NCBI GenBank assembly: GCA_002269645.1
Contig: NIVC01001811.1
Location: 186,001-250,000, forward strand
DNA length: 64,000 bases
Source: Macrostomum lignano
Lineage: Eukaryota
Direction: 5' to 3'
The notes below the pieces were generated by a model. That model was not told the DNA's origin, ran no database searches, and saw only the letters and a list, made by a program, of their open reading frames with translations. The position numbers were made by a program, and so were the translations under genes. Shown piece by piece: positions 11,459-44,412 of this stretch (position 1 is its first letter; every line of letters starts with the position of its first letter).

Positions 11459-12619
11459 CTACTCGTTGCACACCTGTTGCAGCCGCAGAAACTCTGTTTT
11501 ATTGAGAAGTTTCGTGCTCAGCGCAAAGCACAGCATGCTACCTTTTAGACAGGTTGCATCGCTTGATGACGAGCCGAGTCGCAGGCACTGAAACACCACG
11601 TTTGATCGATCAAGAGGGGCATTTGAAGTTCGTGAAACTCCGACCAGCGATCCGTTTTGGTACACGCGCTGGTGTCCGTTCCGGTCGAAGGTAACCCCAG
11701 CAGAGAACAGGTGCTCAGCTCCGTCAACCGGCAGAAAATAGCTCGAATAGCCGTATATCTTCTCACCAACAGTACCGTCAGCGGACAGCCAGGCATAGCC
11801 GTAAAAGTAATCATCATTCTTGATGAGCGAGCAACCAATGCCACTGCCCGAGCACGCCTGGAACCTGCTGTAGTACTGTCTCCTGCAGTGATAGCATTCT
11901 CATGGTCAAGCACTACGAAATGCATGTACGAGCTAATCTATCTGCTCAAGTCTAGCGAAAACGACTCACCCGCTAGTAAAAACGTGCCGAACCTGAGCAA
12001 AAGTCGAGTAGGTGGAACCGACTCCCAGAAACTTCTCAAAACCGGGAGTCTCAGTGCTCAGATAGGAGCCCGTGTTGCCCTTGAAGTGAGCACCAGCTGC
12101 ATCAACTGTTACATCGTGAGCCTTGAGACAGGACATTCTCGGGTTGACCTCATTCTTCAGACCGCTCCGAGAGAACTTGTAGAACAGCTTCAGCTTGAAC
12201 TGTTTCACCAAGGGCTCAGAAGACTCTGCAGTGATAAATTTATAATCAGTTTAAACAAAGTAAATGATTTCATTGGAGAGACGCAGAGCTGTCAAGACAG
12301 CAGCCGCTGAGCCGCTCACCGCAGTCTCCGCACAGCACATCGGTGTACTTGTAAGAGTCGCGCAGTCGCCGTCAGTCCATTGCTCGAGTTGAGAACACGC
12401 GTCTCCATGGTAACACAGGCGGGTGGTGATGTCGAAGTGGAATGCGTTGCAGGTGAGCAGGCGGGAGCAGGCGGCGGCGCACTGCAGCTTGCTGGCCAGG
12501 CGGTGCGGCAGCGGAGAGGCGGCCGCGGTGGGGCAGCGTCGGGTCTTCTCGAATGACAGCTCAGCAGCAGCAAGTCTGAAAGAGACCAGTAAAAGAAGCA
12601 GAGCTAAAAAATAATTCAT
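11459..12619 (-). pseudogene. PAN/Apple-LamG family copy A, frameshifted in exon 1
   Basis: Exons 12619-12320, 12225-11970 and 11882-11459. A 2-nt insertion near 12360 (GACTGCGCGACT versus GACTGCGACT in the other copies) shifts the frame. Exon 3 is open: QYYSRFQ...AGVTFD...RVYQNGSLVG...FQCLRLG...LKGSMLCFALSTKLLN. Confidence 0.8.
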
Positions 12620-13552: not shown

Positions 13553-14735
13553 ATGAAAAGGATTCGACTGTCGACTCTGCCCTGCCTCCTGCTGCTCAGC
13601 TGCCTGCTGGCGGCGACTTCAAGCGCCAAGGTGCTGTCGAACTTCGCCGCGGTCAAGACCCGACGCTGCCCCACCGCAGCCGCCTCTCCGCTGCCGCACC
13701 GCCTGGCCAGCAAGCTGCAGTGCGCCGCCGCCTGCTCCCGACTGCCCACCTGCAACGCATTCCACTTCGACATCGCCACCCGCCTGTGTTACCATGGAGA
13801 CGCGTGTTCCCAACTCGAACAATGGACTGACGGCGACTGCGACTCTTACAAGTACACCGATGTGCTGTGCGGAGACTGCGGTGAGCGGCTCAGTGGCTGC
13901 TGTCTTGTCAATTAATCTGTATCGCTCCAATGAAGTCATTTGCTTTGTTTAAATAGATTATGCATTTATCACTGCAGAGTCTTCTGAGCCCTTGGTGAAA
14001 CAGCTCAAGCTGAAGCTGTTCTACAAGTTCTCTCGGAGCGGTCTGAAGAATGAGGTCAACCGGAGACTGTCCTGTCTCAGGGCTCACGACGTGACAATTG
14101 ATGCAGCTGGTGCTCACTTCAAGGGCAACACGAGCTCCTACTTGAGCACTGAGACTCCCGGTTTTGAGAAGCTTCTGGGAGTCGGTTCCACCTACTCGAC
14201 TTTTGCGCAGGTTCGGCACGCCATGACTAAGGATGAGTGAGTTGAAACTGTCTGTGATGCTTTGAAACCGCTGCTCACCTTCTAGCCGCGCCTCTACCGC
14301 TGCACAAGCAGGTATCAGTACTACAGCCGGTTCCAAGAGTGCTCAGGAACCAACATCGGCAGCTCTCTGATCAAGCGCTCAGAGTATTTCTACGGTTTCG
14401 CCTGGCTGTCCAGCGGCGGCGGGAGTGTCGGCGAGAGAATTTTCGGATTTTCGTCTTTTTTTCTACCGACTGATGGCTCGGTGCGTCTCCTGTCGGCTGG
14501 AGTCACCTTCAACGGGCTGGAGCAGAAGCACATGTATCAGAACGGCACGCTGGTTGCGACGTCTTCGTTTAGTAAAAGTTCTTTGAATTCTTCAGCGGCG
14601 TCCTTTCAGTGCCTGCGACTCGGATTCGGGCCCGCAAGTGACAGATGTCTGAGCGGCACAATGAGTTGCTTTGCACTGAGCAGTGAGATGCTCAACGAGT
14701 CTGAGTTTCGGCTGCTCCAGCAGCTCTGCTACTGA
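13553..14735 (+). CDS. Secreted PAN/Apple + LamG(ConA-like) protein, copy B, 336 aa
   Basis: Exons 13553-13880, 13978-14236 and 14312-14735 (phases 1 and 2, GTGAG donors, CAG acceptors). Hydrophobic leader; PAN pattern CAAACSRLPTCNAFHFDIATRLC; LamG-like pattern LFYKF...HFKGNTSSY...STFAQV...AGVTFN...HMYQNG...LRLG...LSGTMSCF...ML.ESEF..L. Confidence 0.85.
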
Positions 14736-17736: not shown

Positions 17737-23635
<5,899 letters not shown>

Positions 23636-24788: not shown

Positions 24789-25960
24789 ATGTCAGTGCTC
24801 TGCCTCCTGCTGCTCAGCTGCCTGCTGGCGGCGACTTCAAGCGCCAAGGTGCTGTCAAACTTTGCAGCAACAAAGACCCCACGCTGCCCCACCGCGGCCG
24901 CCTCTCCGCTGCCGCACCGCCTGGCCAGCAAGCTGCAGTGCGCCACCGCCTGCTCCCGACTGCCCACCTGCAACGCATTCCACTTCGACATCGCCACCCG
25001 CCTGTGTTACCATGGAGACGCGTGTTCCCAACTCGAGCAATGGACTGACGGCGACTGCGACTCTTACAAGTACACCGATGTGCTGTGCGGAGACTGCGGT
25101 GAGCGGCTCAGCGGCTGCTGTCTTGACAATTCTGTATCGCTCCAATGAAGTCATTTGCTTTGTTTAAATAGATTATGAATTTATCACTGCAGAGTCTTCT
25201 GAGCCCCTGGTGAAACAGCTCAAGCTGAAGCTGTTCTACAAGTTCTCTCGGAGCGGTCTGAAGAATGAGGTCAACCCGAGACTGTCCTGTCTCAAGGCTC
25301 ACGACGTGACAATTGATGCAGCAGGTGCTCACTTCAAGGGCAACACGGGCTCCTACTTGAGCACTGAGACCCCCGGTTTTGAGAAGCTTCTGGACTATGG
25401 AAAGAACTACTCCTTCTTTTTGAAGTTCGCTGATGCCATGGAAGGCGTGTGAGTTGTTATAAAGAACAATTCAATAAGGTAGATTCTGATTAGTAAGGCA
25501 TTTTAAACACCTCTCTCTGCGCCACAGCAACACAATCTACCATCGCTACCAGCTATGCAAAGACGACACGAGCACTCCGGCGAACACATTCGGCCGCAGT
25601 CTCGGTGGCATCTACAACTACGCGGCCTGGACCGTTCGCTTCGATGGCGCCGGGTACCTTCGGGCGTCATCCTCAGAGCTGCTTGACACCACCGATGCTT
25701 TGCGCAGACTGTCGATTGGCGTTGTCTTCTCAGCTAAGAAACAGATGCACTTCTACTTCAACGGCGCACTGTCAATGATTGATGCGTTAAGCGGCGGGTT
25801 TTCTCCGGTGCCACGTGAGGAGTTTCACTGCCTTCGGCTGGGCTACCACAGCTTCCAGGAGAAATGCCTGAAGGGCAGCATGACCTGCTACGGTCTGACT
25901 GCAAAAGCCTTCGGATTAGCTGACTTTGCTGCGGTTGAGCGGCTGTGTGAAACCGATTGA
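24789..25960 (+). CDS. PAN/Apple-LamG family copy D, 332 aa
   Basis: Exons 24789-25098, 25193-25448 and 25528-25960, in phase with no internal stops. Confidence 0.85.
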
Positions 25961-28035: not shown

Positions 28036-29254
28036 ATGGCGGTTCTGATGCTGCTATTTTTGTTGCCCTGCCTGGGCCCGGCTGCTGGCAGCCAGCTCGT
28101 GTCCTTCGTGACTGTTAAAAAGTGTCCCACCGCAGACGCCTCTCCGCTGCGGCACCGCCTGGCCAGTAAGCTGCAGTGCGCCGCCGCCTGCTCCCGACTG
28201 CCCACCTGCAACGCATTCCACTTCAACATCACCACCCGCCTGTGTTACCATGGAGACGCGTGTTCCCAACTCGAGCAATGGACTGACGGTGACTGCGACT
28301 CTTACAAGTACACCGATGTGCTGTGCGGAGACTGCGGTGAGCGGCTCAGCGGCTGCAGCTGTCTTGACAATTCTACGAGCGTATTGCTCCAATGAAGTCA
28401 TTTACTTTGTAGGAAAATTGATTATGCATTTATCACTGCAGAGTCTTCTGAGCCGCTGGTGAAACAGCTCAAGCTGAAGCTGTTCTACAAGTTCTCTCGG
28501 AGCGGTCTGAAGAATGAGGTCAACCCGAGACTGTCCTGTCTCAAGGCTCACGATGTGACAATTGATGCAGCTGGTGCTCACTTCAAGGGCAACACGAGCT
28601 CCTACTTGAGCACTGAGACTCCCGGTTTTGAGAAGCTTCTGGGCTCTGCTTCTGAGTACTCCATGTTTTTTCAAGTAAAGCACGTTTTTGATTCTAGTGG
28701 GTAAGTTTAACTGTTTAAATACTTCAAAGCATTATACTTTAGTTCTAACTTTTTTTTTTTTAAATTTTTAAAATTTTTAATTTTTAAAAAAAGCCATTGT
28801 TACATTTTAACTATGAATCATCTGCAGGCAAATTTACTACCATCGTTTCCTGCGCTGCGGGACCCAGGTGTATGCCGGAAACTTGCTTTACAAGTGGAAC
28901 AATAAATTAACTTTGCAAACAACGCATTTATTAAGCAACGGCACTGTTCTCGGTTCCTATTATTCGTCACCCTCTGTCTTGCCCACTGACGGCCTGCAGC
29001 ACCAAATGTCAACAGGATTTGCTTTTGGCGGCCTCTCTAACCAGGGATTTTTCTTGAATGACTCTGTGACTGCTGCTGACCCAATTTCATCTGACGGCCA
29101 ATATTCTCCAAGCAACTTCGGGTGTCTGCATCTTGGCCAAGGTAAGATGGATTCCAAAAGTCTTAGCGGCAGCATGAGCTGCTACGGAATGAGCACCAAG
29201 ATGCTCAGCCTGATCGAATTTGAGCAAATCCGGAAGCTGTGCGATTCGGACTAA
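28036..29254 (+). CDS. PAN/Apple-LamG family copy E, ~328 aa
   Basis: Exons 28036 (or 28009)-28336, 28442-28700 and 28828-29254, in phase. Confidence 0.85.
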
Positions 29255-29414
29255 AATGGTTTGTTACCTGGGCAAAAACGGCTCGTTGGACGTTGAATTG
29301 AACAGCTAGCAAACGCTGATGGAATTCATGAACTTAAATTTGTTCTAACGATTGCTGAGACAATGTTTTCGGGAAGAACTTCAACAAGCAGACAAATATT
29401 CACTGTTCATTATT

Positions 29415-29512
29415 TGAATATTTACTATTCACTACTCAAATATTCACTATTCAAATATTCACCACTCAAATATTCACTACTCAAATATTCGCCACTCAAA
29501 TATTCGCTATTC
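29415..29512. repeat. 15-bp minisatellite tattcactactcaaa (short allele)
   Basis: About 6 units here versus about 14 at ~35460-35675. Confidence 0.88.
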
Positions 29513-31179
29513 GAGTCTGTTGTACCAATATCAACTCTTGTAGAACCTCGTGCTTGTCCCAGCTTATAATAGCTAGATTATTCTTAAAATTGTTTTGAAA
29601 TATTTTAGTGAGTAGAAGGAATGGCGCTTTACAATTTGATTTTATGTTGAAAAAACGCAATTTTTTTAACGAAATATTTCAAACTACCGTTAAAGAGTTT
29701 CATTTATTTTCATATACCGAATTATTTATTTATTTGTTTTTCATAATTAATTGGTCAATCACTCTAAAATATACGCTCTTATTTAAACAATTATTTATCC
29801 ATAATAAGTGAGCTAACTAAGCATATTTACTAAAACAACAAACAGAGAATGTAATCTCTTTGTCAAGGCTCTCTTTGTCTTTGCAACCGTCTTTCTTATA
29901 CTTCCAAGCATCTATGAGCGTAATTATCACAATGTACACAAATCTGGCGTGACTCTGTATTGCGTAATTTTCATACGCAAGCAATCTCACGCGACTATCT
30001 AATGTCAGTTACAATGTTTTCATGGAGTACGTCTCTCGGGTTTTAATGGAAGACTACCTAGGTAAGGCCGTCCCTCGATAACATATATTTTTTATCGGCA
30101 AATACACGCATTTTTCAATACAAGTATTTTTCTCCCATTCAATTGTTTATATCTCGGAGCGCCTATCTGACTAGCTATAAACAATAACTTTAAACTGTAA
30201 ACGATCTACATATTTTGCTAAGCGGATCATGGCTTAATTATAATAATACTGGTTATACGCGTTTTTTTCTGGAGCCTTTGAGTTGGTGTTCTCACTTTCT
30301 TAAGATAGATGTCTAGCGGTCTAAGGTTCGTAAAGCTCTAATTTCTCTCATCAGGCCGTCAGAGAAAACCGTATAAACTGACGGGATCTCCTAGTATCTA
30401 AGCTGAGTTTGACTCTTTCTCGGATTTGCTCTGCGTGACAATTAAGACAAATAACTGTATTGAAGACTTAGATTTGTGCCAACTGGATAATCCAGAGGCC
30501 AATTCAAAGGGAGCAATTCGAGATCGAAAACTGCGCAAGAAAAACGAAGCGCCGCTCTAGTTTGAGATGAGCGTCTATTTATACCAATTAGCATTTTTGA
30601 CCTCCCCCGCCGCCGGTGGGGTGTCTTCGCGTGGTTAGCAACGGCGGGGGGTTTTAAGCAATAAAAATCTGGGACTCAGTCCCCTAGTTGTACATGAATT
30701 CAGTTAGTTCTAGTAGGTTGCTAAGTGTGAGGGTTAGAGATTACTCGGGGTTTCGCAAATCTATGTGTTGAGTTAGATAAAATTTGGGATAGAAAGATTA
30801 TAGAAAAAGAGCTTAATTTTCCGTCTCTTAACTCTGTCCATGAATGATTAAACAGTCCTCTGTTTCTCTCGGTTGTCAGGCAGCTTGGGGTTGATCTCGC
30901 CTTCTTGGGCAGCTTCGGGTTGAATAGGAGTCTGTAGGTGGGCCTCACGTTTTCTCCCTCAGGGTGCGCCAGAAGATGCCGCGTGCCGCGTTGTTCTCTA
31001 AGCTGGCCGCTGCTCAGTTTGCTTTTCCCAGCCGGTTTAGTCGCCATTGTGCCTGCGGCGGGGTGTCGCTACTGACTGGAATGAAAAGGGGCTTTATTAG
31101 ATTCGGCTATTCAAATTGACTTGACAGTTGAATAATTATCTTAAAGCTGCTTCTGTTCGCCTATCTAATAGCTTTCCAG

Positions 31180-31580
31180 GGGTTCCATTGTGCTCTTTTG
31201 CCTCGCCCTTCGAGGTTTCGGGGCTTGGAAAACCGAATCATCGATTACTGGACTAATCGGCCACTCGGCCGCAGTTTTGCCTACCGATGGGAGGCGAGCG
31301 ACCATCACAGCTGGATATGCTTTAACGTGTTGCACCATCGCACTTTTATTCAAAAGGCTCAACTGCATTTGTGGACCATGTTCAAGCGATGACATCAGGA
31401 AATGATTTGTCCATGTACTCTCGTTTCTTCGAATGTCTAACTCTGGGCAAGGCTGGATCTGGTAGCCAGAACCTCAACGGCACGATGCACTGCTTCGGGT
31501 TCAGCGATAAAGCGCTGAGCCTGAGCGAGTTTCAGCATCTGGATCAGCTCTGCACTAACTACTGGCTCAGCAGTAGCTAA
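31180..31580 (+). pseudogene. Orphan LamG terminal exon (exon-3 paralog) with two 1-nt deletions
   Basis: tttccag|G acceptor in phase 2; LPTDG...AGYA(F)N...FIQ(x)GS...FFECLTLG...LNGTMHCFGFSDKALSLSEF..LDQLC. No exon 1 or 2 directly upstream. Confidence 0.7.
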
Positions 31581-34072
31581 ATCACAGATGAAGCACCACG
31601 GTTAACTCAAGTGAAACGAATCTTTTTATTACATTTTAACATCCAACTACCATTAGAAATATTTCTTCGTAGTACTCAGGTAGAAGTTAATATCTCTGCT
31701 TTTCTAAAAATTATTTTAACTATAATCTGTCGTTGCACTACGACTATATTTTGTTAAACCATGCAGAGTCGATAATGCCTGCTTACACCCATTTTTCTTA
31801 TCTAATTAAATATCTGAATCCATTTATTATGATTAAAACACTAAAATATTTTTTGTATATCAGCCAGGAAAAATTAACAATCAAAAGTACTATAAGCACT
31901 TGCACTCTCCTAGCAACCTTTCTAAAACTCACAATTTTAACTTGAGCAGCATGGGATATTTTAAACAATTAATTTTACCAATAAAAAAGTTTACGATTTT
32001 GTTCAAATTAGATATGAATCTAAGCAATGAAACTGATTTTTCTAACCGTCTCTCGGTCTCGAACCAGACGCTGCTAACAGTCGACGATGAGTCCATGGCG
32101 AGCAGTGATATGACGTGACTATAATCTTGATATTATTTTAATTGCATATGCATTTTGACGCGTTTTGTTTTATCTATGGACTAAATGAAGCTGCAAAACA
32201 GGCTTGGGTTAAAAGCCCGCTGTGAGAATGTTAAATAAAGAGAAATAAGAGCAAGGCTAAGAACCTTGGAGCAGCGTAAAAGTCTGCTATGATATCAGCA
32301 CTAATAACTAACGTCTTAAGCATACTGAAGTAACCTGAAAACATAACAAGCAGGTTTTTCAGAGTATGGTCACCAGCTGAGACTTGCCCACGGTCGAGGC
32401 TTGATCATCAGCAAAACTAAAAAAATTCGCAACAGGTTGTCCATAATCAGCATAATCACCAGAAGGCGGAGTGGGCAACGAGCTGATGAAATTTTGAGGC
32501 TCGGCAGTGCTGATTCTGTTGAATACTTAAATGCTCAAGGAAAAATTCGACTTTTTGGCAAAATCGTTGAATATCTCGACAGTCCGGAAGGCTGGCGACT
32601 TGATTCTTGTTTGAGGTGTGCAACAAAAATTAGCCTGTCTTCTTGACAGTTGTGTGCGCGTTGCCGCGTTCGGGCGCATAAAAAGATGCCTGTGGAAATC
32701 ATCCCTTTTTCGACAGGCGGATTTTGGCTTGGCGTTACTTGGAATCAGATTTGCGCTCTTCTCCACTTCCCAAACCATGCTGTCCATCGACGGTCTTTTG
32801 TAAGATTCTTGTATCAAACTTTCAGTGTATTTGCAAGTAAGTTAGTAAGATTCGCGAGTCAATATTAACATTTTTCTCTTTACATTGTGATTAATGCGTA
32901 GAAAATTGACATTTAGACAGAACCACTGAAGTGTTCTGTGGACAGAAACAAGGACACAGGACACAAGGTGCTAAATCCTTGCGAACTCTGTATTGCGTCA
33001 TGTTTATATGGAAGCACCACACCTAACTATTTAATATAGGTTAAAATGTTTCCATGGATCGAGTGTCTATCAAATGGAAGATTCAAACTTGCATACAAAG
33101 TAAGTCAGGGACCGCGGTTTCTAACTCCGACTGCTTTTAGCCGGTCTTAACCGCAAGAGCAAGCTATACAGTCCTCACTTTCATACACGTAGACTTTTGA
33201 AATGATCCGCTCCAACATCCGTTTCCCGAAACTGCAGAAGCTTTACTTTGTATTCTTTTTTCGCCAGCTACTAGTTAGTAGCCGCGATCTAGCTTACATA
33301 AAGCAAGTCTTGAATCGTCGATCGATTTAAACGATAAAAATCATTGGCAATCGGTTTGATTGGGGTCCGCTGTCGCCACTAGTGAGTTGTAACGTCTCAT
33401 AATTGTATTTGTCGAATTTTCTGCAACAGAACCACAGCATGGGACTGAAAAGCATTTGAAAAATTGAATGATTTTAACAAACGACCGTGAACAATCAGTC
33501 TGTGCAAAGTTTTCCATCATAAACTTTCAGCCAAATTCCGTTAATTTTACGAGTTGCTCTGTGCTCAGAACTTCAGAGTGATGCAGTGACGGCCGCAACA
33601 CTAGCGGGATATTGTCCGACTCAAACGTTGTCACTCGTCAGTCAATCTTCTATAGGGGCTATTGTGGATTGTTTGAGTAAGCGAAAATAGCTAGAACAAA
33701 CGCTAGAAGCCGTTCATGGCTTCAACATATGCGAGAAATGCATCAGTAAAAAGTTTCTTCTTTCGCAACAAAAGCGGAAAAGCAAAAACTCTACTGGAGA
33801 TTTCTTTACTTCAAATTGTCTGCTCCTTCCTGAGCTGGTCTGAGGTTGCTGGTGAGTTTCCTGCCAGAATATGCATGGGGACTTTGATCGGCCCAGTCAA
33901 CCCCAAGTTTTTTAAAGCTACAAGGCTATTACCATCACAGAGACAACCGGATACAAGCATAATGAAAGAAGAAAATTTCTTTTTTTTGCATTCATCGCGG
34001 GATGCATAAAATGCATTAAGAAAGCTGCAGAAGTCTTCTGTGGTAGATTTGGAATTAGCGTCTCAATTAAAA

Positions 34073-35299
34073 ATGAAGCTTTTTGCATGTAAGTTTCGCT
34101 TGAGTCTTTCTGAGCTGCGAGCTCCACTTCTCTTGCTGCTCTGCCTGAGTGACATGGCCTGCTGTGTCTCGGCCACCGATGTGCTGGCATTCGAGAAGAC
34201 CCGACGCTGCCCCACCGCGGCCGCCTCTCCGCTGCCGCACCGCCTGGCCAGCAAGCTGCAGTGCGCCGCCGCCTGCTCCCGACTGCCCACCTGCAACGCA
34301 TTCCACTTCGACATCGCCACCCGCCTGTTACCATGGAGACGCGTGTTCCCAACTCGAGCAATGGACTGACGGCGACTGCGACTCTTACAAGTACACCGAT
34401 GTGCTGTGCGGAGACTGCGGTGAGCGGCTCGGTGGCTGCTGTCTTGACAGCTCTGCGTCTCTCCAATAAAATCATTTTTTTGTTTAAACTCATTATAAAT
34501 TTATCACTGCAGAGTCTTCTGAGCCGCTGGTGAAACAGCTCAAGCTGAAGCTGTTCTACAAGTTCTCTCGGAGCGGTCTGAAGAATGAGGTCAACCCGAG
34601 ACTGTCCTGTCTCAAGGCTCACGACGTGACAATTGATGCAGCAGGTGCTCACTTCAAGGGCAACAGGAGCTCCTACCTGAGCACTGAGACTCCCGGTTTT
34701 GAGAAGCTTCTGGACTCTGCTACTGAATACTCCATCTATTTTCAAGTAAAGCACATTTTTGATGCTGGGTAAGTTTAACTGTTTAAATACCCCAATGAAA
34801 GCATGGTAAAATAGTTCCAATTATTTTCTAAAAAAACATTATCATATTCTGACCATCAATTATGATCTGCAGGTGGGTTTACTACCATCGTTTCCTGCGC
34901 TGCGGGACCCAGGTGTATGCCGGAAACTCGCTTTACAAGTGGAACAATAAATTAACTTTGCAAACAACGCATTTATTAAGCAACGGTTCTGTTCTCGGTT
35001 TCTATTATTCGTCACCCTCTGCTTTGCCCACTGACGGTCTGCAGCACCAAATGTCAACAGGATTCGCTTTTGGCGGCCTCTCTAACCAGGGATTTTTCTT
35101 GAATGACTCTGTGACTGCTGCTGACCCAAGTTCATCTGGTGGCTTATATTCTCCAAGCGATTTCGGATGTCTGCATCTTGGCCAAGGTACGAGCGATTCC
35201 AACAGTCTTAGCGGCAGCATGAGCTGCTACGGAATGAGCACCAAGATGCTCAGCCTGAACGAGTTTGAGCAAATCCGGAAGCTGTGCGATTCGGACTAA
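34073..35299 (+). pseudogene. PAN/Apple-LamG family copy F, frameshifted in exon 1
   Basis: Exons 34073-34419, 34513-34768 and 34873-35299. A 2-nt deletion near 34327 (CGCCTGTTAC versus CGCCTGTGTTAC) gives a stop at 34369. Confidence 0.8.
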
Positions 35300-35459
35300 A
35301 ATGGTTTGTTACCTGGGCAAAAACGGTTTTCTGGACGTTGAATTGAACAGCTAGCAAACGCTGATGGAATTCATGAACTTTAATTTGTTCTAACGATTGC
35401 TGAGACAATGTTTTCGGAAAGAACTTCAACAAGCAGACAAATATTCACTGTTCATTATT

Positions 35460-35675
35460 TGAATATTTACTATTCACTACTCAAATATTCACTACTCAAA
35501 AATTCACTACTCAAATATTCACTACTCAAATATTCACTACTCAAATATTCACTACTCAAATATTCACTACTCAAATATTCACTACTCAAATATTCACTAC
35601 TCAAATATTCACTACTCAAATATTCACTACTCAAAAATTCACTACTCAAATATTCACCACTCAAATATTCGCTAT
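35460..35675. repeat. 15-bp minisatellite tattcactactcaaa (long allele)
   Basis: Direct reading. Confidence 0.9.
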
Positions 35676-37360
35676 TCGAGTCTGTTGTACCAATACCAAC
35701 TCTTGTAGAACCTCGTGCTTGTCCCAGCTTATAATAGCTAGATTATTCTTAAAATTGTTTTGAAATATTTTAGTGAGTAGAAGGAATGGCGCTTTACAAT
35801 TTGATATTATGTTGAGAAAATCGCAATTTTTTAACGAAATATTTCAAACTACCGTTTAAGAGTGTCACTTATTTTCATATACCGAATTATTTATTTCTCT
35901 GTTTTTCATAATTATTTGGTCAATCACTCTAAAATATACGCTCTTATATAAACAATTATTTATCCATAATAACTGAGCCAACTGAGCATCTTGAACATTT
36001 ACTAAAAACAACAAACAGAGAAAGTTATCTCTTTGTCAAGGCTCTCGTTATTTATGCAACCGTCTTTCTTATACTTCCAAGCAAAAGAGTTCATCTATGA
36101 GCGTAATTATAACAATGTACACAAGTCTGGCGTAACTCTGTATTGCGTAATTTTCCTACGCAAGCAATCTCACGTGACTATCTAATGTAAGTTACAATGT
36201 TTTCATGGAGTACGTCTCTCGGGTTTTAATGGAAGACTACCTAGGTAAGGCCGTCCCTCGATATCATATATTTTTTATCGGCAAATACACGCATTTTTCA
36301 ATACAAGTATTTTTCTCCCATTCAATTGTTTATATCTCGGAGCGCCTATCTGACTAGCTATAAACAATAACTTTAAACTGTAAACGATCTACATATTTTG
36401 CTAAGCGGATCATGGCTTAATTATAATAATACTGGTTATACGCGTTTTTTTCTGGAGCCTTTGAGTTGGTGTTCTCACTTTCTTAAGATAGATGTCTAGC
36501 GGTCTAAGGTTCGTAAAGCTCTAATTTCTCTCATCAGGCCGTCAGAGAAAACCGTATAAACTGACGGGATCTCCTAGTATCTAAGCTGAGTTTGACTCTT
36601 TCTCGGATTTGCTCTGCGTGACAATTAAGACAAATAACTGTATTGAAGACTTAGATTTGTGCCAACTGGATAATCCAGAGGCCAATTCAAAGGGAGCAAT
36701 TCGAGATCGAAAACTGCGCAAGAAAAACGAAGCGCCGCTCTAGTTTGAGATGAGCGTCTATTTATACCAATTAGCATTTTTGACCTCCCCGCCGCCGGTG
36801 GGGTGTCTTCGCGTGGATAGCAACGGCGGGGGTTTTAAGTAATAAAAATCTGGGACTCAGTCCCCTAGTTGTACATGAATTCAGTTAGTTCTAGTAGGTT
36901 GCTAAGTGTGAGGGTTAGAGATTACTCGGGGTTTCGCAAATCTATGTGTTGAGTTAGATAAAATTTGGGATAGAAAGATTATAGAAAAAGAGCTTAATTT
37001 TCCGTCTCTTAACTCTGTCCATGAATGATTAAACAGTCCTCTGTTTCTCTCGGTTGTCAGGCAGCTTGGGGTTGATCTCGCCTTCTTGGGCAGCTTCGGG
37101 TTGAATAGGAGTCTGTAGGTGGGCCTCACGTTTTCTCCCTCAGGGTGCGCCAGAAGATGCCGCGTGCCGCGTTGTTCTCTAAGCTGGCCGCTGCTCAGTT
37201 TGCTTTTCCCAGCCGGTTTAGTCGCCATTGTGCCTGCGGCGGGGTGTCGCTACTGACTGGAATGAAAAGGGGCTTTATTAGATTCGGCTATTCAAATTGA
37301 CTTGACAGTTGAATAATTATCTTAAAGCTGCTTCTGTTCGCCTATCTAATAGCTTTCCAG

Positions 37361-37761
37361 GGGTTCCATTGTGCTCTTTTGCCTCGCCCTTCGAGGTTTC
37401 GGGGCTTGGAAAACCGAATCATCGATTACTGGACTAATCGGCCACTCGGCCGCAGTTTTGCCTACCGATGGGAGGCGAGCGACCATCACAGCTGGATATG
37501 CTTTAACGTGTTGCACCATCGCACTTTTATTCAAAAGGCTCAACTGCATTTGTGGACCATGTTCAAGCGATGACATCAGGAAATGATTTGTCCATGTACT
37601 CTCGTTTCTTCGAATGTCTAACTCTGGGCAAGGCTGGATCTGGTAGCCAGAACCTCAACGGCACGATGCACTGCTTCGGGTTCAGCGATAAAGCGCTGAA
37701 CCTGAGCGAGTTTCAGCATCTGGATCAGCTCTGCACTGACTACTGGCTCAGCAGTAGCTAA
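37361..37761 (+). pseudogene. Second orphan LamG terminal exon (duplicate of 31180-31580)
   Basis: Near-identical to the first orphan and carries the same two indels. Confidence 0.7.
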
Positions 37762-38994
37762 ATCACAGATGAAGCACCACGGTTAACTCAAGTGAAACGA
37801 ATCTTTTTATTACATTTTAACATCCAACTACCATTAGAAATATTTCTTCGTAGTACTCAGGTAGAAGTTAATATCTCTGCTTTTCTAAAAATTATTTTAA
37901 CTATAATCTGTCGTTGCACTACGACTATATTTTGTTAAACCATGCAGAGTCGATAATGCCTGCTTACACCCATTTTTCTTATCTAATTAAATATCTGAAT
38001 CCATTTATTATGATTAAAACACTAAAATATTTTTTGTATATCAGCCAGGAAAAATTAACAATCAAAAGTACTATAAGCACTTGCACTCTCCTAGCAACCT
38101 TTCTAAAACTCACAATTTTAACTTGAGCAGCATGGGATATTTTAAACAATTAATTTTACCAATAAAAAAGTTTACGATTTTGTTCAAATTAGATATGAAT
38201 CTAAGCAATGAAACTGATTTTTCTAACCGTCTCTCGGTCTCGAACCAGACGCTGCTGACGGTCGACGATAAGTCCATGGTGAGCAAGATTTTCAGAGGAT
38301 GACCACCAGTTGAGGTTTGCCCACTGTGGAGGCTTGATCAACGAAACTATAGAGAAACTCGCAACAGGTTGTCCATAGTCACCTGGTGCCGCACCTGTTA
38401 AAGGTCCAGAAGCTCTACCTGGTTGAGGGCCAGTGACCAATAAAGTCAGAGCTGATGCAGGCTGCACATTCGGTTGACATGATGATGAAGTTAGGAGGCT
38501 GGGGACTTGATTCTTGGTTGAGCAACAAGTTTGCGCATCAAAGAGTAGCACGCGTCTTCTTAAATTTCGTGCGCTTGCGATACTCTGTTCCGACGCAGAC
38601 AAAAAATTGTCAGGGTGAATCTCTCCTCCCCCTTAATTGCCGGTAAAAATCTCTAGTCTAAAGCACAGGCTCAGGTTTCGTTTCTTGTTCAAGACTCACT
38701 TCATGGTACATGTAAGAATCAATCAATGTCAAAGTCACACTGAATACATGAATGCACATTAAAACTCAGTCAAGCACGTGACAAAAACAATTCAGACGAA
38801 TAGCTGGTGCGCTCAGTTAATCTTAAACGAAGCCTTTGAGATTCTCTTGGCTGACTGGACAACCAATAAAAGCAGGGCCAGCTAAATAAATAATTGCTAA
38901 ATTCAAATCGATACAACTTATCTTGACTAAACTTATAAACCGCATGGTTAATACTTTGGACTGGCACAAACTGAGCAGGAAGCCACAGACTCAA

Positions 38995-40147
38995 ATGAGA
39001 GTGCTCTGCCTCCTGCTGCTCAGCTGCCTGCTGGCGGTGACTTCAAGCGCCGAGGTGCTGCCGAAATTCGCAGCGACAAAGACCCGACGCTGCCCCACCG
39101 CGGCCGCCTCTCCGCTGCCGCACCGTCTGGCCAGCAAGCTGCAGTGCGCCGCCGCCTGCTCCCGACTGCCCACCTGCAACGCATTCCACTTCGACATCGC
39201 CACCCGCCTGTGTTACCATGGAGACGCGTGTTCCCAAATCGAGCAATGGACTGACGGCGACTGCGACTCTTACAAGTACACCGATGTGCTGTGCAGAGAC
39301 TGCGGTAAGCGGCTCAGTGGCTGCTGTCTTGACAGCTCTGCGTCTCTCCAATGAAATCATTTACTTTGTTTAAATTGATTATGCATTTATCACTGCAGAG
39401 TCTTCTGAGCCGCTGGTGAAACAGCTCAAGCTGAAGCTGTTCTACAAGTTCTCTCGGAGCGGTCTGAAGAATGAGGTCAACCCGAGACTGTCCTGTCTCA
39501 AGGTTCACGATGTGACTATTGATGCAGCTGGTGCCCACTTTGCTGGTGAAACAAGCTCCTACCTGAGCACCGAGACTCCCGGGTTCTGGAACTTTTTATC
39601 GATGAACCGAGAATTCTCAGCGTTTACTAGAGTCAGACACCCTTTTGGCATTGGGTACCACATTTTTTTCAAAATAATTTTTTCAATGTCAAAGTCGTCT
39701 GTAACTCTGTAACTCGACACTTATCATTATTTCAGCTATCAGTTCTACCACAGATTCCAGCAGTGCAACGGAAACACGGGAAACACTTTTGCTAAAAACA
39801 ACGACTACATCTACAACGGAGCTGTACTCAGCAACAATGCTGTGCTGTTCTCATTGTCGCCATCATTTCTACCCTCCGGTGGCATGCAAAAAGAGATTTC
39901 AGTTGGTTTCACATTCAACAGAACTGCACATCAGCAATTCTTCTTCAACGGCTCCATCGCTCCGGTTTTCTACGCCTACTCAGAGGCGAACTCTTATTCG
40001 ACAAGTCTGTTCGAGTGCCTTCGCCTGGGCCAATCGCTGGTTGATGCCAACTGTCTCAACGGTGTCATGGTATGCTACGGATTCAGCGCAAAAGTACTGA
40101 GTGCCAGCGAGTTTGAGCAGCTCCAGCAGCTCTGCGACTCCGATTGA
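38995..40147 (+). CDS. PAN/Apple-LamG family copy G, 325 aa
   Basis: Exons 38995-39304, 39399-39654 (weak GTACCA donor, but the same 256-nt length as most paralogs) and 39736-40147. Confidence 0.8.
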
Positions 40148-43100
40148 ACAGTTGGAAAGCGAATTTTGCTAACGGAAATTAAATAGAAAGTCTGGAAACT
40201 GCGTGTAAAACTGACACTAACGTGTCGCGTTATTGAGAGAAAACAATTTAATTAAACCGCGGGTAATGCTGAGAAACAATGGCACGACAAAAACTGATTG
40301 TCGAATTCGTGACAAAAATTCAAATCTGACTTGGGAGAAATTTCTGAGAAAAGCACGATTCTTGTTAAAATAAAGTTTTATTAAACATCTTCTTAAGCTT
40401 TGATACTCAGCAGTTGAGGCTTGATTAGGGACATCAGAGACTTCCGGGAGGGGGGTTAGCCTTCATAAGCTCGAAAACGACCTCCTCCAGACGGAATCGA
40501 ACCCTCGGGGTCGTGGCGCAACTAGAAATGTGTTCACTAAAGACAATCTTTTTAAACAAATACATGTACTTTCCTGATGGAATTACATTGGAGATATAAT
40601 GGATGATACTGCACCCATTGTGACTGCATGAACCCATATGGATCAGCGTGGCACCATCTATATTGGCTACCAGAAAAAGTTTTGCAGACGCTACCCTTGG
40701 TGCTGTGGGCACGAAGGATATTAATATCCTGATTCAAAAGTACATTTATAAAGACAAAACTACATATTTTATGGCTATTACGAGCTAGAGTAAGCTAAAG
40801 CAGTTTAGTCAAAATGACTTTCGCAGCAGGAAAGTCAGTTGACCAACTATTAAAACTACCAGATGGGCGAAGTCTGCAACCGTCGCGGCATCATTGTAGT
40901 CTGGGCAGTAGGGACATTCAAACGAGCCGCACACCTTGCAGATGTCGGCGCTATGAAGCGAATGCGCTCTGTAGTACCTACAAAGTTCCCGTTGTCTGAA
41001 ACAATATTTAAGCGATAGAATTCTTAAAATGGCAAACACAAAACAAAAAATTTGGACGCTGTTCGGGGTAGCTTTTAACGCTTAGAATGAGTCGAATGGT
41101 TGAAATGACGCTTAATTAATAAAACAAATAAATTGTAAACAAATAAAAAATAATATTAATTTACAGTTGTTGTTAAAATTTTCATGCAAAAAACTTAATG
41201 AGAATATTTTTGTTTGGATTGGTGATTAAAAACTCTATGCCGGTCTAACTATAAGCTACTCAGAATACGCGCCCTATGCGTAGGCACAAAAGCATGCATG
41301 CTACCATTTCGAAATAGTCGTAGACTTGACAGTACTGTTCCACCGTGGCGTTTGCGACCGGATGCCATCTCGGATAGTTCAACGTAATGCAGGTTTTCTC
41401 CGTTGATGTAAACTGGAATCGGATGATATTAGAATATTAATTGTCGTTGTGAAATAGCCTATTGAACCTTTAGATGCTACTAACATAATGGACCACTAAA
41501 GTCTCGTAGAAAGAAAGCTACAATAGAAAATAGTGTGATAGTTAACCTCTAAGCACCCAAAGCACACTGAATTATTCTCAAAATTAGTCAGCATAAGACG
41601 AAAAAGTTGGTACGTGGTGAAAATCACGCAATTTACGAGTCCCTCCAAGAATTACTCCTACTCTGACGCTCACATTAGTAAAAAACATGCTGACAGTCTG
41701 GCCGCTTTCCCAAATGTGCCGCAGGCCTCTAATTCGGAGTTCTGCACAAGATTGCGCAGGTCGTAGTTGGTCAGCTTGTAGCCGCTGGGCAGGGCGTAGG
41801 ACAAGATGGCCATGCCGCTGGTCTCCGATTCTGCAGTCCAGGTCCATCTGGCAGTAAAAGTTTATCCAGGATTTCCGGCCAATGTTTAATAAACAGTCAT
41901 ATATAATAATAACAGACAATATTGAAAGTGTGACTAGTCTGGCATTGATGCTTTGTAATTTTTAATAAGGTTTTCAATTACAATGTCTGTACTTTCTCTA
42001 TTTGTCGAGAAAGTGACGTCACTCACCGAGCACAAGTTGTCATAGTGAATATGCTGGCATTCCGACCAGAGTAGGAGGGCAGGCAGGTCAAATCGAAGGT
42101 CTGCAAAGAGCCCTGCGGATGAATTGGATCCGCAGCGTTCTTGATCTGAAAGTCGTGCTCGGCACTCTTTTTAGTAAATAGTTGCAGCACCGCGCACCCG
42201 CTGCCGGACGCTCGCACGGTGACCTCGCCCCAGGTGTCGTCATTATCCAAGTTAAACACTCGCGGCAGGGTCAGGTTTTCACTGTCGAGTACGAATGTTT
42301 CAGCTTTAGCAATATTCGAGCTCGGCACAATGTCGATTTGCAGCTTATAGACGGGACGGTTTAAATCCAGCGTGGCCATTTCGCGCAGCGCCTTCACTGC
42401 AAACACAGTGTCCTGCGTGGAGACCCAGCCGTTAGTCATGTTCTTAGTCTCTGTGATAAAGTTCAGCATCTCTGTTAGGTTAGCCTGAAGCTCTTGATCA
42501 GCATTCGGGATCGCGTCCTGATCAGAGCCATCAGGGCGAATGAGGTGCCTGGACAGCTGTGCCATCGTTGGGCCACTCAATCCTCGGCTTGATCACGATT
42601 TTTCCCGCTGAGTCAGGCTCTCGAATCAGAGGTCTCACGATGCTATTAGCCCAATAAAGATAATTGTCAGCTCGCACTGTGCTCATCAGCATCTCTCGAG
42701 CGATGAATTTTGACTGCAAAGTATCGTCGTCAAAGGTGAGGGCGTACGCCGTCATGGCCAGGCAGAGGGCGTAGCGGTTCATTATGGATAGGTGACGGCG
42801 CAGATAGTCGATGGCGGCATTGCTGACCTCCTCCGGCCAACTGGCTAAGCGGCTTGGGAGTATTCGGATGCTTTTTTGCCAGCACAGCTAGTGCGGTGAT
42901 GGGCGTTCGCTCCAAGTAGATCTTCGTATCGTTGCTGAACAGTTTCTCAGTCATGTAGGGGCACATGTGCTTGATGTCCCACTTCGTCTTGTCATTGAAC
43001 GATCCATATAGATCGCCAGTTCTAACCTGGGTTGCGTTTAAATACACCAAATACCGCTGAAACACATCGAAACTGATGAACACCGTTTGGTCCCACTCGG

Positions 43101-44169
43101 AGAAGGCCGTCTCAGCCAAGGTGAACAGTCCGAATGCGGTCAGGAACGCGCTGGTCTCGCCCAAGAATCTCTCTGGAAAGTTGGAGACTCCGCCGCTGAC
43201 TGGATCCATGTAGAAGGACAGTCGGGTGTACTGCGTGTTGATGTATTTCAGCGAAGCGGCTAACGTCGCCGGTTCCAACTGCTTTGTCATTCGCAAGTAG
43301 TGCAGCATCTGCACATTCCTGTTGATGTTGAAGAGGACGCTCTCGGCCGAGCCGACGGGCTTCCACGCCGAGCAGGAGGCGTCGCAAAATGGCTCGGCAG
43401 GGCCAAGTGTCGGCCCGACGATGTCGCCCGCCACCGTCAGCACCGCGGCCTTGGAGCGGGGCACGAACCGACGCCAGCGCTGATCCGGCTCGACAAACGA
43501 CTGCTCGGGGATGAGGTAGAGATTCTGTGCCATCAGCTCCGAGTTGTCAACCAGATCGAGCAGGATCGGCGTGCTGTACGAGTTAGAGATGCCGTTGATC
43601 TGAAACAAAAGTTGTTCATTGGATAAGGGAGCGTTAGAAATATGTTTATTGCACCTTTTAAACTGTGCCCTTCCTGTGTTATGTTTGGTACAAAAAGATA
43701 GAATAATAGCGCCAAGTCAATTAGAGAAGTCAACAGTGAGATGCTACTTTCACAGTCTTCCCCGTTGAACACATTTGAAAGACCGACTTTGCAATCAGAC
43801 GCTCTCTCTTTCTCCTGCAGTAGCCAGATTGTAAGCAACTCAGCTTTGTACACAATCTGGCCTGTTGCGGCTCTCAGATAGACCATAGTGTGAATGGTGG
43901 CGTTGGATTTTAGTGCGGGACTGTAACTGTTCACCTGGCCTTTCCAGCCAACGGATACAAAATCGCAGTCAGTATTTTGCTTCATCTCGACTAGAACCTG
44001 AAATTTAGTCGTTTTATTATGCGCTCTACATAATCAAGCTACAAATATAGGTGTTCTTTCTGCTTCAGCTGCCATGACCTGTACAACCATGTAATCTACG
44101 CGACTAAGAAGTCGCTAGAAGTCGCTAAACGGCTTATGCAAACAGTATGTTATTCAATAATAAATAATA

Positions 44170-44412
44170 ACAATTGATTACATCTGCCTCAATGGCGCAT
44201 CTGAAGGCTGCATACGGCTGTTCAGTCCAAGGACTGGGTCGCCACACACCCTCAATTACCCCAGCTAATGCCTGGTACCCATTTACAGCTGGGTGAACTG
44301 AAGCAATGCAAAGTTAAGTGTCTTGCTTAAGGACACAAATTGTTCAGAGTAAGATCGGGAATCGAACCCCAGACCTTTAAATCGAGAGTCCAACGCTCTG
44401 ACCACTAGGCTA
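44170..44412 (-). mobile_element. tRNA-derived SINE with CORE-like domain (family 2)
   Basis: The minus strand reads TAGCCTAGTGG...GGTTCGATTCC then GTGTCCTTAAGCAAGACACTTAAC...CTTCAGTTCACCCAGCTGTAAATGGG, resembling the MIR CORE consensus. Second copy at ~63010-63262. Confidence 0.7.

What the first reader, a model, noticed from the sequence alone, without database searches (positions are those of the whole stretch)
34073..35299. Copy F is a chimera: A-like 5' end on an E-like 3' end
Seen: F exon 3 and downstream DNA are the tandem duplicate of E. Yet F shares CATTCGAGAAGACC (FEKTRRCP) and the intron-1 haplotype gacagctctgcgtctctccaat...aaact.attataaatt with copy A, 22 kb away on the opposite strand. 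E instead carries the B/C/D-type intron (gacaattct...tccaatgaagtc) and a different leader. G intron 1 looks A/F-like in its first half and B/E-like in its second. Inference: the constant block acts as a recombination hub that reassorts promoters and leaders with variable C-terminal halves.
Basis: seen in the sequence. Interest (0 to 1): 0.75.

Follow-up and report, generated by a model that had tools for sequence, protein, structure and literature searches.

The report
Mosaic pseudogene in flatworm lectin-like cluster
Copy F of a seven-gene flatworm family really is a patchwork: its back half duplicates neighbour E and one intron matches distant copy A, which is the ordinary result of gene conversion between tandem paralogs, and F itself looks broken.

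Summary
The window, which is Macrostomum lignano or a very close relative, carries seven paralogs (A-G). Each is a 3-exon gene for a secreted PAN/apple plus ConA-like jelly-roll protein.

All seven share a ~520-bp block at 92-96% identity. It covers most of exon 1, intron 1 and most of exon 2. Leaders, promoters and exon 3 differ.

Synonymous divergence is 0.02-0.18 in the block. It is saturated in exon 3 for every pair except E-F (0.11). So the block is homogenised by recombination, not only conserved.

Segment trees conflict:
- Intron 1 groups A+F (87%) and A+F+G (95%).
- The 3' part groups E+F (100%) and A+B+C (99%).

The switch in F lies between 34498 and 34526.

"A-like 5' end" is overstated. 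F's promoter and signal peptide resemble no other copy, and its exon 1 is consensus-like. Only a 14-30-nt junction and the intron-1 haplotype are A-like.

F has a 2-bp deletion that gives a stop at codon 99, and A has a 2-bp insertion. Both are probable pseudogenes, or else assembly indels.

The best reading is repeated ectopic gene conversion plus one ~4-kb E/F exchange that ends inside the block. Promoter reassortment is not shown. This is a known kind of family evolution, of moderate interest.

The parts
34073..34419 (+). Copy F exon 1. It has a unique signal-peptide leader, then the junction FEKTRRCP and the PAN/apple domain. Two bases are missing (TG of CTGTGTT, context 34319-34336), which gives a premature TGA at 34367-34369.
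34188..34201 (+). The 14-mer CATTCGAGAAGACC, shared only with copy A (12542-12555, minus strand).
   Evidence: A and F match over only about 30 nt here
34420..34512 (+). F intron 1. The A/G-type haplotype covers at least 34450-34498 and at most 34434-34525. Five F-private changes are interleaved with it.
34498..34526 (+). Interval that holds the switch from A-like to E-like sequence in F.
   Evidence: max-chi-square breakpoint, permutation p < 0.0005; Fisher p = 0.01 on informative sites only
34513..34768 (+). F exon 2. The constant part runs to about 34713 and is closest to E (4 differences) and D (5). The variable tail is E-type.
34873..35299 (+). F exon 3, which encodes the rest of the ConA-like jelly-roll. 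It is a duplicate of E exon 3. Over the variable part (exon 2 tail plus exon 3), E-F dS is 0.11 and dN/dS 0.56, and the frame is open.
34208..38285 (+). F side of the young E/F duplicated segment.
28123..32104 (+). E side of the young E/F duplicated segment. Identity is about 94% through the gene and the first 0.7 kb of flank, then 99.8-100% over 30062-32104.
28036..29254 (+). Copy E, intact. Exons are 28036-28336, 28442-28700 and 28828-29254. The leader junction is private (SFVTVKKCP) and intron 1 carries private indels.
11459..12619 (-). Copy A. Exons are 12619-12320, 12225-11970 and 11882-11459. It has FEKTRRCP, the F/G-type intron 1 and a B/C-type exon 3. Two extra bases in exon 1 (context 12351-12370) shift the frame.
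13553..14735 (+). Copy B, intact, head-to-head with A.
22384..23635 (-). Copy C. It is intact but has lost its stop codon and runs 22 codons into sequence next to a LINE.
24789..25960 (+). Copy D, intact, head-to-head with C, with its own exon-3 type.
38995..40147 (+). Copy G, intact. It has the B/C/D-type leader. Intron 1 is A-like and then E-like. Its constant block ends earlier, about 60 nt before the others. The intron 2 donor is weak (GTACCA).
31226..31553 (+). Relic exon-3 fragment of a further family member, lying in the E spacer.
   Evidence: tblastn; sequence read
37407..37734 (+). The same relic exon-3 fragment, lying in the F spacer.

Best explanation
**What the genes are.** The region is a 29-kb cluster of seven paralogs, plus two relic fragments, of a family seen so far only in Macrostomum. 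Each gene encodes a secreted protein with a signal peptide, a PAN/apple domain and a ConA-like lectin jelly-roll.

**How the cluster evolves.**
- A ~520-bp 5' block covers most of exon 1, intron 1 and most of exon 2. Ectopic, non-reciprocal recombination (gene conversion) between the copies keeps it nearly identical.
- Exon 3, which encodes most of the jelly-roll, has diverged too far to take part.
- The block is the only long stretch of homology between subfamilies, so recombination events start or end in it.

**What F is.** F is one product of this process.
- (i) It has its own promoter and signal peptide.
- (ii) It has a junction-to-intron-1 stretch of the type found in A (and partly in G, and in a paralog elsewhere, P0001).
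- (iii) From the start of exon 2 it is a copy of E that continues about 3 kb past the gene.

That ~4-kb E/F exchange is either a long conversion tract or an unequal crossover. It is about as old as the A-F similarity, at roughly 5-6% divergence.

F then lost 2 bp in exon 1 and is now most likely a pseudogene, as is A.

**Shown:** the mosaic structure, the homogenised block, the location of the E/F homology boundary, and the frameshifts as they stand in this assembly.

**Inferred:** the mechanism (conversion versus crossover), the direction of transfer, and that the frameshifts are real.
For: - **Homogenisation.** dS in the constant coding block is 0.02-0.18 for all 21 pairs. dS in the variable part is 0.8 to saturated for every pair except E-F (0.11). 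Intron 1 aligns among all seven copies, whereas intron 2 aligns only between E and F.
- **Mosaicism.** 56% of informative site pairs are incompatible and PHI p is 0.009-0.03. Bootstrapped segment trees conflict. Per-segment distances differ.
- **Timing.** F-D synonymous differences in the block are 3, where about 10.5 are expected from the E-F age (Poisson p = 0.007). So the block exchanged after the E/F duplication.
- **E/F boundary.** No alignable DNA lies upstream of 28123/34208, and identity is 94-100% for the next 4 kb.
- **Older array.** Weak collinear homology of 66-80% between the F and G upstream regions points to an older E-F-G tandem array under a younger overlay.
- **F-private changes.** They are interleaved with the A-like intron sites, so this is a distinct locus and not a copy-paste of A.
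- **Frameshifts.**
- **Family and fold.** Pfam gives sub-threshold PAN and Laminin_G_3 hits. A profile search against PDB sequences hits PAN domains at E = 5e-5 to 1e-3. An AlphaFold model has pLDDT 85.8, and its fold matches are jelly-rolls. All relatives found are from M. lignano.
Against: - Only 21 informative sites exist in the block. Several exon sites are CpG transitions that could be homoplasies. Exon 1 and exon 2 are unresolved on their own.
- The direction of transfer, and whether E or F is the recombinant, cannot be told.
- Heterogeneous E/F identity (94%, 82%, then 100%) needs more than one event.
- No reads, no second assembly and no orthologous cluster were available. The frameshifts and single-site mosaics could therefore be consensus errors. 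If the window comes from Mlig_3_7, that assembly was built from PacBio reads with Canu and polished by Pilon with short reads.
- GC3 is only modestly higher in the block (0.72-0.76 against 0.53-0.67). That is weak support for long-term biased conversion.
Confidence: 0.7

Rival explanations
1. The constant block is a functional recombination hub. It repeatedly swaps whole 5' modules (promoter plus leader) onto different variable C-terminal halves, creating new expressed combinations as an adaptive diversity generator.
For: - Leader type and exon-3 type are strongly incongruent.
- The E/F exchange ends in the block.
- P0003 pairs an E-type leader with a D-type exon 3.
- A/F and several other pairs lie in inverted orientation, so crossovers in the block would swap 5' modules without leaving duplicates.
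Against: - No two copies share promoter DNA.
- F's leader is not A's.
- The one clear chimera (F) and its partner (A) are frameshifted.
- dN/dS in the variable part is 0.2-0.56, with no sign of positive selection.
- P0003 is an unverified gene model from another assembly. It uses a cryptic splice site and skips the PAN domain.
Confidence: 0.12
2. Assembly or polishing artefact. F's join, or the single-site mosaics and the 2-bp indels, arose from mis-joined reads or from short reads of other paralogs mis-mapped during consensus polishing.
For: - The public Mlig_3_7 assembly is Canu PacBio polished by Pilon with Illumina and RNA-seq reads, and it holds much redundant, at least 95% identical sequence.
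- The block is 92-96% identical among seven copies.
- A 2-kb stretch at 99.8-100% identity sits beside sequence at 94%.
- Both frameshifts are 2-bp slips in dinucleotide repeats, while the downstream frames stay open.
Against: - The shared block of ~520 bp is far shorter than long reads.
- F's 5' flank of about 2 kb and its 3' part each differ from every other copy: the 5' flank is unique, and the 3' part is 6% from E.
- The A-like intron sites are interleaved with five F-private changes within 60 nt. Mis-mapped A reads could not produce that.
- It is not known which assembly the window comes from.
Confidence: 0.1
3. No recombination. The block is simply under strong purifying selection, on the protein or on an embedded DNA/RNA element, and the shared variants are parallel mutations.
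For: - Exons are more uniform than intron 1.
- dN in the block is very low, 0.007-0.045.
- Some shared exon variants are at CpG sites.
Against: - Synonymous sites and the intron are conserved 10- to 50-fold more than in the rest of the same genes.
- Six linked intron sites within 60 nt support A+F or A+F+G against the E+F grouping of exon 3.
- No Rfam family matches the region.
- The E/F homology boundary inside the block cannot be produced by selection.
Confidence: 0.03

Closest known systems
Partial concerted evolution of tandem gene families by ectopic gene conversion. Textbook examples recalled from memory, not tested here: globin, opsin, MHC/KIR and plant NLR clusters.
   Same: - A segment including non-coding DNA is kept near-identical among paralogs while the rest diverges.
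- Copies are mosaic, segment trees are incongruent, and pseudogene copies take part.
   Different: - The homogenised segment is the 5' half.
- Its 3' edge lies inside exon 2 and inside a protein domain, not at an exon or domain border.
- The family is uncharacterised and known only from Macrostomum.
SmPoMuc polymorphic mucins of the flatworm Schistosoma mansoni (PMC2576457, read).
   Same: - It is a flatworm multigene family specific to its lineage.
- It has a constant region and frequent recombination that produces mosaic genes.
- Pseudogenes contribute segments, and repeats are homogenised by gene conversion.
   Different: - SmPoMuc variability lies in 5' tandem-repeat exons, and the 3' part is constant. 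Here the polarity is reversed.
- The proteins are unrelated: mucins there, PAN plus jelly-roll here.
- No host-parasite context is known for Macrostomum.
Lepore / anti-Lepore-type hybrid genes formed by unequal crossover between tandem paralogs (recalled from memory).
   Same: - F has the 3' part and the 3' flank of a neighbouring paralog (E).
- The switch lies inside a shared homologous block.
   Different: - The 5' flank of F matches no other copy in the window. Only part of the intergenic spacer is duplicated, and at uneven identity. A single unequal crossover therefore does not fit.
- The A-like tract is short.
ConA-like lectin / Laminin-G-like jelly-roll domains preceded by a PAN/apple module.
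   Same: - The predicted fold and the cysteine pattern agree.
- Profile hits to PAN domains of MIC4, HGF and a fungal oxidase.
- Jelly-roll fold matches.
   Different: - Single sequences stay below Pfam's curated cut-offs.
- Identity to any solved structure is about 10%.
- The ligand and the function are unknown.
- The top fold matches are a structural sub-domain of bacterial neurotoxin binding regions. This indicates a shared fold only and does not suggest toxicity.

Membership tests
PAN/apple domain proteins (Pfam PF00024 / PF14295) | Match to the PAN profile above the curated threshold | tested here: inconclusive
   Single sequences score 16-18.8 bits against cut-offs of 21.4 and 27. A family profile hits PAN domains in the PDB (6ryw, MIC4, HGF N domain) at E = 5e-5 to 1e-3. 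UniProt names the relatives 'Apple domain-containing'.
PAN/apple domain proteins | Conserved cysteine framework and a helix-on-sheet fold | tested here: met
   Cysteines C30, C48, C52, C58, C70, C76, C87, C97 and C100 are invariant in alignment A1. The model shows a helix at 45-54 packed on strands, with pLDDT 82-92 in this region.
ConA-like lectin / Laminin_G_3 jelly-roll (PF13385 clan) | Jelly-roll beta-sandwich fold | tested here: met
   The AlphaFold model has pLDDT 85.8 and about 16 strands. Foldseek returns 173 PDB matches with E <= 1e-3, and the best are lectin-like jelly-rolls. The profile matches the same sub-domain at E of about 2.5e-4.
ConA-like lectin / Laminin_G_3 | Pfam profile match above threshold | tested here: not met
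   Only copy B matches, at 17.4 bits against a cut-off of 27.6. So this is a fold-level assignment, not sequence-family membership.
Gene family under concerted evolution by gene conversion | A segment far less diverged at silent and non-coding sites than the rest of the same paralogs | tested here: met
   dS is 0.02-0.18 in the block and saturated in the variable part. Intron 1 aligns among all seven copies and intron 2 does not.
Gene family under concerted evolution by gene conversion | Mosaic copies: phylogenetic incongruence between adjacent segments and a positive recombination test | tested here: met
   PHI p is 0.009-0.03, and AF 87% / AFG 95% conflict with EF 100%.
Gene family under concerted evolution by gene conversion | Paralogs within a species closer to each other than to their orthologs in a sister species | not testable with these tools
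   No other Macrostomum genome or homeologous contig could be reached.
Hybrid gene formed by a single unequal crossover (Lepore type) | The 5' flank comes from one parent and the 3' flank from the other, with the whole intergenic spacer duplicated at uniform identity | tested here: not met
   The 3' flank is E's. The 5' flank matches no copy. The spacer is duplicated only to 32104/38285, and identity ranges from 82 to 100%.
Programmed diversity generators (cassette conversion as in VSG, chicken Ig and VLR) | Somatic or programmed transfer from silent donors into an expression site | not testable with these tools
   Only one germline assembly sequence is available. Nothing in it, such as recombination signal sequences or a single expression site, suggests this.

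The most novel reading that the evidence does not exclude
The cluster would be a flatworm counterpart of diversified recognition-protein families.
- A homogenised 'constant' module (signal peptide, PAN domain and first jelly-roll strands) is kept apart from a fast-diverging 'variable' ligand-binding module by a sharp recombination boundary inside exon 2.
- Frameshifted copies (A, F) and relic fragments serve as sequence reservoirs.
- Exchanges in the block create new leader/C-terminus combinations that are expressed, as the E-leader/D-tail model P0003 hints. This might serve immunity or reproduction. A thioester-protein-like ORF lies 2.5 kb from G.
Probability: 0.1. Interest if true: 0.7.

Novelty: new member of a known kind. 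Interest (0 to 1): 0.35.

Why it matters
- The cluster documents a clear case of segment-restricted concerted evolution in Macrostomum lignano. This is a regeneration model whose neopolyploid, highly duplicated genome makes paralog histories hard to read.
- It also defines a previously undescribed family of secreted PAN plus jelly-roll proteins, known only from this lineage.
- For annotation, two of the seven copies appear frameshifted, so F and A should not be called as intact genes without read support.
- Short-read mapping or polishing in the 520-bp block will be unreliable.
- If the variable halves prove to bind different ligands, the cluster would be a tractable system for studying how recombination boundaries shape constant/variable architectures.

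Tried and rejected
- **Independent copy of the locus.** I looked for a second assembled copy to check the F join and the frameshifts. Exact look-ups of P0003, P0001 and the LINE ORF2 found no contig. A protein search with the neighbouring TED-domain ORF found nothing at E <= 1e-20. Only a distant family member's contig (L001, NCBI NIVC01002407.1) could be fetched, and it does not bear on F.
- **First structure prediction.** A 7-sequence alignment gave pLDDT 45.9 and was discarded. An 18-sequence alignment gave a usable model.
- **Raw triplet test.** The test of F against A and E gives an extreme p-value. I discounted it, because about half of the 'A-like' sites are merely E-private and half of the 'E-like' sites are A-private. 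The informative-site count was used instead.
- **Transposon hypothesis.** I asked whether the 2-kb near-identical block is a transposon. Only weak, short inverted or direct repeats lie near its ends, so this is unresolved.
- **Antisense ORFs.** ORFs overlap F (33918-34820) and A (11657-12310), but the other copies lack them. I treated them as by-products of GC-rich codons.
- **Rfam.** No RNA family was found in or near the block.
- **Literature.** Searches found nothing on this family in Macrostomum.

Full report
**What is there**

The window holds seven copies of a three-exon gene.
- A search with a 29-mer from exon 2 finds seven sites and none in shuffled sequence.
- BLAST of the F region against the window gives the same seven loci.
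- Splice-aware models are A 12619..12320 / 12225..11970 / 11882..11459 (-) and B 13553..13880 / 13978..14236 / 14312..14735 (+).
- They continue with C 23635..23305 / 23210..22955 / 22864..22384 (-) and D 24789..25098 / 25193..25448 / 25528..25960 (+).
- The last three are E 28036..28336 / 28442..28700 / 28828..29254 (+), F 34073..34419 / 34513..34768 / 34873..35299 (+) and G 38995..39304 / 39399..39654 / 39736..40147 (+).
- A/B and C/D lie head to head. E, F and G are in tandem.

**Organism and family**

The only close proteins in 5.8 billion sequences are three Macrostomum lignano entries.
- One of them, P0003, has a leader 100% identical to E's. So the window is M. lignano or a very close relative.
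- A full HMMER scan of 1.84 billion representatives found 23 relatives. All ten that I looked up are from M. lignano.

The domain assignment rests on several results.
- Single sequences give sub-threshold Pfam hits to PAN_1 / PAN_4 and, for B only, to Laminin_G_3.
- A family profile hits PAN domains in the PDB.
- An AlphaFold model built from an 18-sequence alignment has pLDDT 85.8. It matches lectin-like jelly-roll domains at about 10% identity.
- The top matches are a structural sub-domain of clostridial neurotoxin binding regions. I take this as a shared ConA-like fold only, and I did not fetch or align those chains.

The proteins are therefore secreted PAN/apple plus ConA-like jelly-roll proteins of unknown ligand. 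No paper on them was found.

**The constant block**

In the seven-way alignment, all copies are 92-96% identical over about 520 bp. The stretch runs from AAGACCCGACGCTGCCCC in exon 1, through the whole of intron 1, to GAGAAGCTTCTGG in exon 2.
- In B, C, D and G the similarity extends 5' to about the ATG.
- In G it stops about 60 nt earlier at the 3' side.
- Upstream DNA does not align between copies.
- Exon 3 falls into the types A/B/C, D, E/F and G.

Nei-Gojobori estimates give dS of 0.02-0.18 in the constant coding part for all 21 pairs. In the variable part dS is 0.8 to saturated for every pair except E-F, where it is 0.11.

Silent sites and an intron are conserved 10- to 50-fold more than the rest of the same genes. 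That means homogenisation by recombination, not just protein constraint.

The 3' edge of the block lies inside exon 2 and inside the jelly-roll domain, about residue 165 in a domain that starts near residue 105. It is therefore a recombination boundary, not an exon or domain boundary. GC3 is somewhat higher in the block, 0.72-0.76 against 0.53-0.67.

**Check of the finding**

- The 14-mer is unique to A and F.
- F's intron 1 is 6 events from A and 9 from G, but 15-17 from B, C and D and 20 from E.
- F's exon 3 and about 3 kb downstream duplicate E: 28123-32104 matches 34208-38285.
- G's intron equals A's up to TTTAAA and equals E's afterwards. This is correct but rests on 3-4 sites.

- Leader plus junction: BCDG|AEF 100%.
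- Constant exon 1 and constant exon 2: unresolved.
- Intron 1: AFG 95%, AF 87%, BCD 92%.
- Exon 2 tail to exon 3: EF 100%, BC 100%, ABC 99%.

The trees are incongruent. In the block, 118 of 210 informative site pairs fail the compatibility test, and PHI permutation p is 0.009-0.03.

For the triplet of F against A and E, the best single breakpoint lies between 34498 and 34526. Many of those sites are only E-private or A-private, so I recounted. Using only sites shared with a subset of copies, F is A-like 7:0 in the intron and 1:4 in exon 2 (Fisher p = 0.01).

- "A-like 5' end" holds only for the last ~30 nt before the block, including FEKTRRCP, and for intron 1.
- F's promoter, 5' UTR and signal peptide match neither A nor any other copy.
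- In constant exon 1, F is 2-3 differences from D, B and C, and 6 from A. Four of those six are A-private.
- FEKTRRCP is not an A/F speciality, because the paralog P0001, encoded outside this window, has TFEKTRRCP.
- E's intron is an intermediate haplotype with private indels. It is not plainly B/C/D-type.
- F is not special either. A has an A-type 5' part on an A/B/C-type exon 3, and G and E are also mosaic.

**Frameshifts**

- F lacks TG in CTGTGTT (context 34319-34336). Its reading frame ends at TGA 34367-34369, after 98 codons.
- A has an extra GC (context 12351-12370, minus strand) and also runs into a stop.
- In both copies exons 2 and 3 stay open. E-F dN/dS is 0.56, against 0.2-0.4 for the other pairs.

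The inactivation is therefore either recent or a set of consensus errors. I could not decide which without reads.

**History of F**

The E/F similarity starts inside the block and is not uniform.
- It is about 94% through the gene and the first 0.7 kb of flank.
- It drops to about 82% near 29.8-29.96 kb.
- It is 99.8-100% over 30062-32104, matching 36245-38285.

That last stretch holds a relic exon-3 fragment of yet another family member, at 31226-31553 and 37407-37734.

Beyond 32104/38285, the F-upstream and G-upstream regions keep weak collinear similarity of 80% and then 66%. This suggests an old E-F-G tandem array on which a younger ~4-kb E/F exchange was laid, followed by a still younger exchange in the spacer.

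- F-D synonymous differences in the block are 3, against about 10.5 expected from the E-F age (p = 0.007). So the block has exchanged since then.
- The A-F intron divergence (6 of 94) is similar to the E-F flank divergence of 5-6%.
- A single unequal crossover does not fit. F's 5' flank is unique, and the spacer duplication is partial and uneven.

**Artefact rival**

If the window comes from Mlig_3_7, that assembly is Canu PacBio polished by Pilon with short reads, and it holds much redundancy at 95% identity or above (PMC5730564). Single-site mosaics and 2-bp indels in a seven-copy block could be polishing errors.

The join itself is unlikely to be an error.
- The shared block is far shorter than long reads.
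- F's flanks differ from all other copies.
- Five F-private changes are interleaved with the A-like intron sites.

I could not reach reads or a second assembled copy.

**Comparison with known systems**

- The pattern is segment-restricted concerted evolution by ectopic gene conversion, with mosaic and pseudogene copies. This is a well-known mode of multigene-family evolution.
- Among flatworms, the SmPoMuc mucins of Schistosoma mansoni show the same ingredients: a constant region, frequent recombination, mosaic genes and pseudogene donors (PMC2576457). Their polarity is the reverse of this cluster, and the proteins are unrelated.
- The family itself and its constant/variable layout in Macrostomum appear undescribed.

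**Verdict**

Recombination in the block is real, and at least one larger exchange ends there.
- Reassortment of promoters is not shown, F's leader is not A's, and F looks non-functional.
- This is a new member of a known kind, of moderate interest.

Noticed in passing
window 34319-34369 and 12351-12370: F has a 2-bp deletion and A has a 2-bp insertion in exon 1. Each sits in a short dinucleotide repeat and each shifts the frame. Exons 2 and 3 stay open in both. These are the two copies that carry FEKTRRCP.
   Followed up: partly
window 30062-32104 and 36245-38285: A 2-kb block is 99.8-100% identical between the E and F spacers, although the adjoining genes are only about 94% identical. It ends exactly where the E/F homology ends. 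The cause could be a recent conversion, a mobile unit or consensus collapse, and this is unresolved.
   Followed up: partly
window 31226-31553 and 37407-37734: Relic exon-3 fragments of a further family member, with an internal frameshift and no exons 1-2. Among the proteins compared they best match P0001 (46-48% identity) and copy G (43-45%).
   Followed up: partly
window 28159-28176 (GT at 28166): An E-private C-to-T change creates GTAAGC inside exon 1. The UniProt model A0A1I8HM75 (P0003) splices exactly there, skips the PAN domain and continues into a D-type exon 3.
   Followed up: partly
window 17737-22453: A non-LTR retrotransposon lies on the minus strand. ORF1 is 21555-22394. ORF2 is 17737-21555 and carries endonuclease, RT and RNase H domains. 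It abuts the 3' end of copy C. B/C homology stops at 22453, C has lost its stop codon, and C reads 22 codons further.
   Followed up: partly
window 29411-29527 and 35471-35674: The 15-nt minisatellite TATTCACTACTCAAA has about 6 copies after E and 13.6 copies after F.
   Followed up: no
window 42730-43608 (-): An ORF with an alpha-2-macroglobulin / thioester-protein TED domain lies 2.5 kb from G. No close protein was found in the large protein collection.
   Followed up: partly
window 44347-45342: A tRNA-Glu(CTC) gene on the minus strand overlaps the start of a 940-bp array of the 14-nt unit ACCACTAGGCTACA.
   Followed up: no
window 4359-4810 and 49413-50403: A (TCAC)n array and an (AGTG)n array lie in inverted orientation 45 kb apart. 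The window as a whole is rich in 15- to 60-nt tandem arrays (27 TRF rows).
   Followed up: no
window 3671-5008 (+), 45913-46722 (+): An ORF with a FancD2 segment lies left of the cluster. An integrase-core ORF lies right of it.
   Followed up: no
window 39655: The intron 2 donor of copy G is GTACCA, a weak splice site. Its model is therefore the least certain of the intact copies.
   Followed up: no
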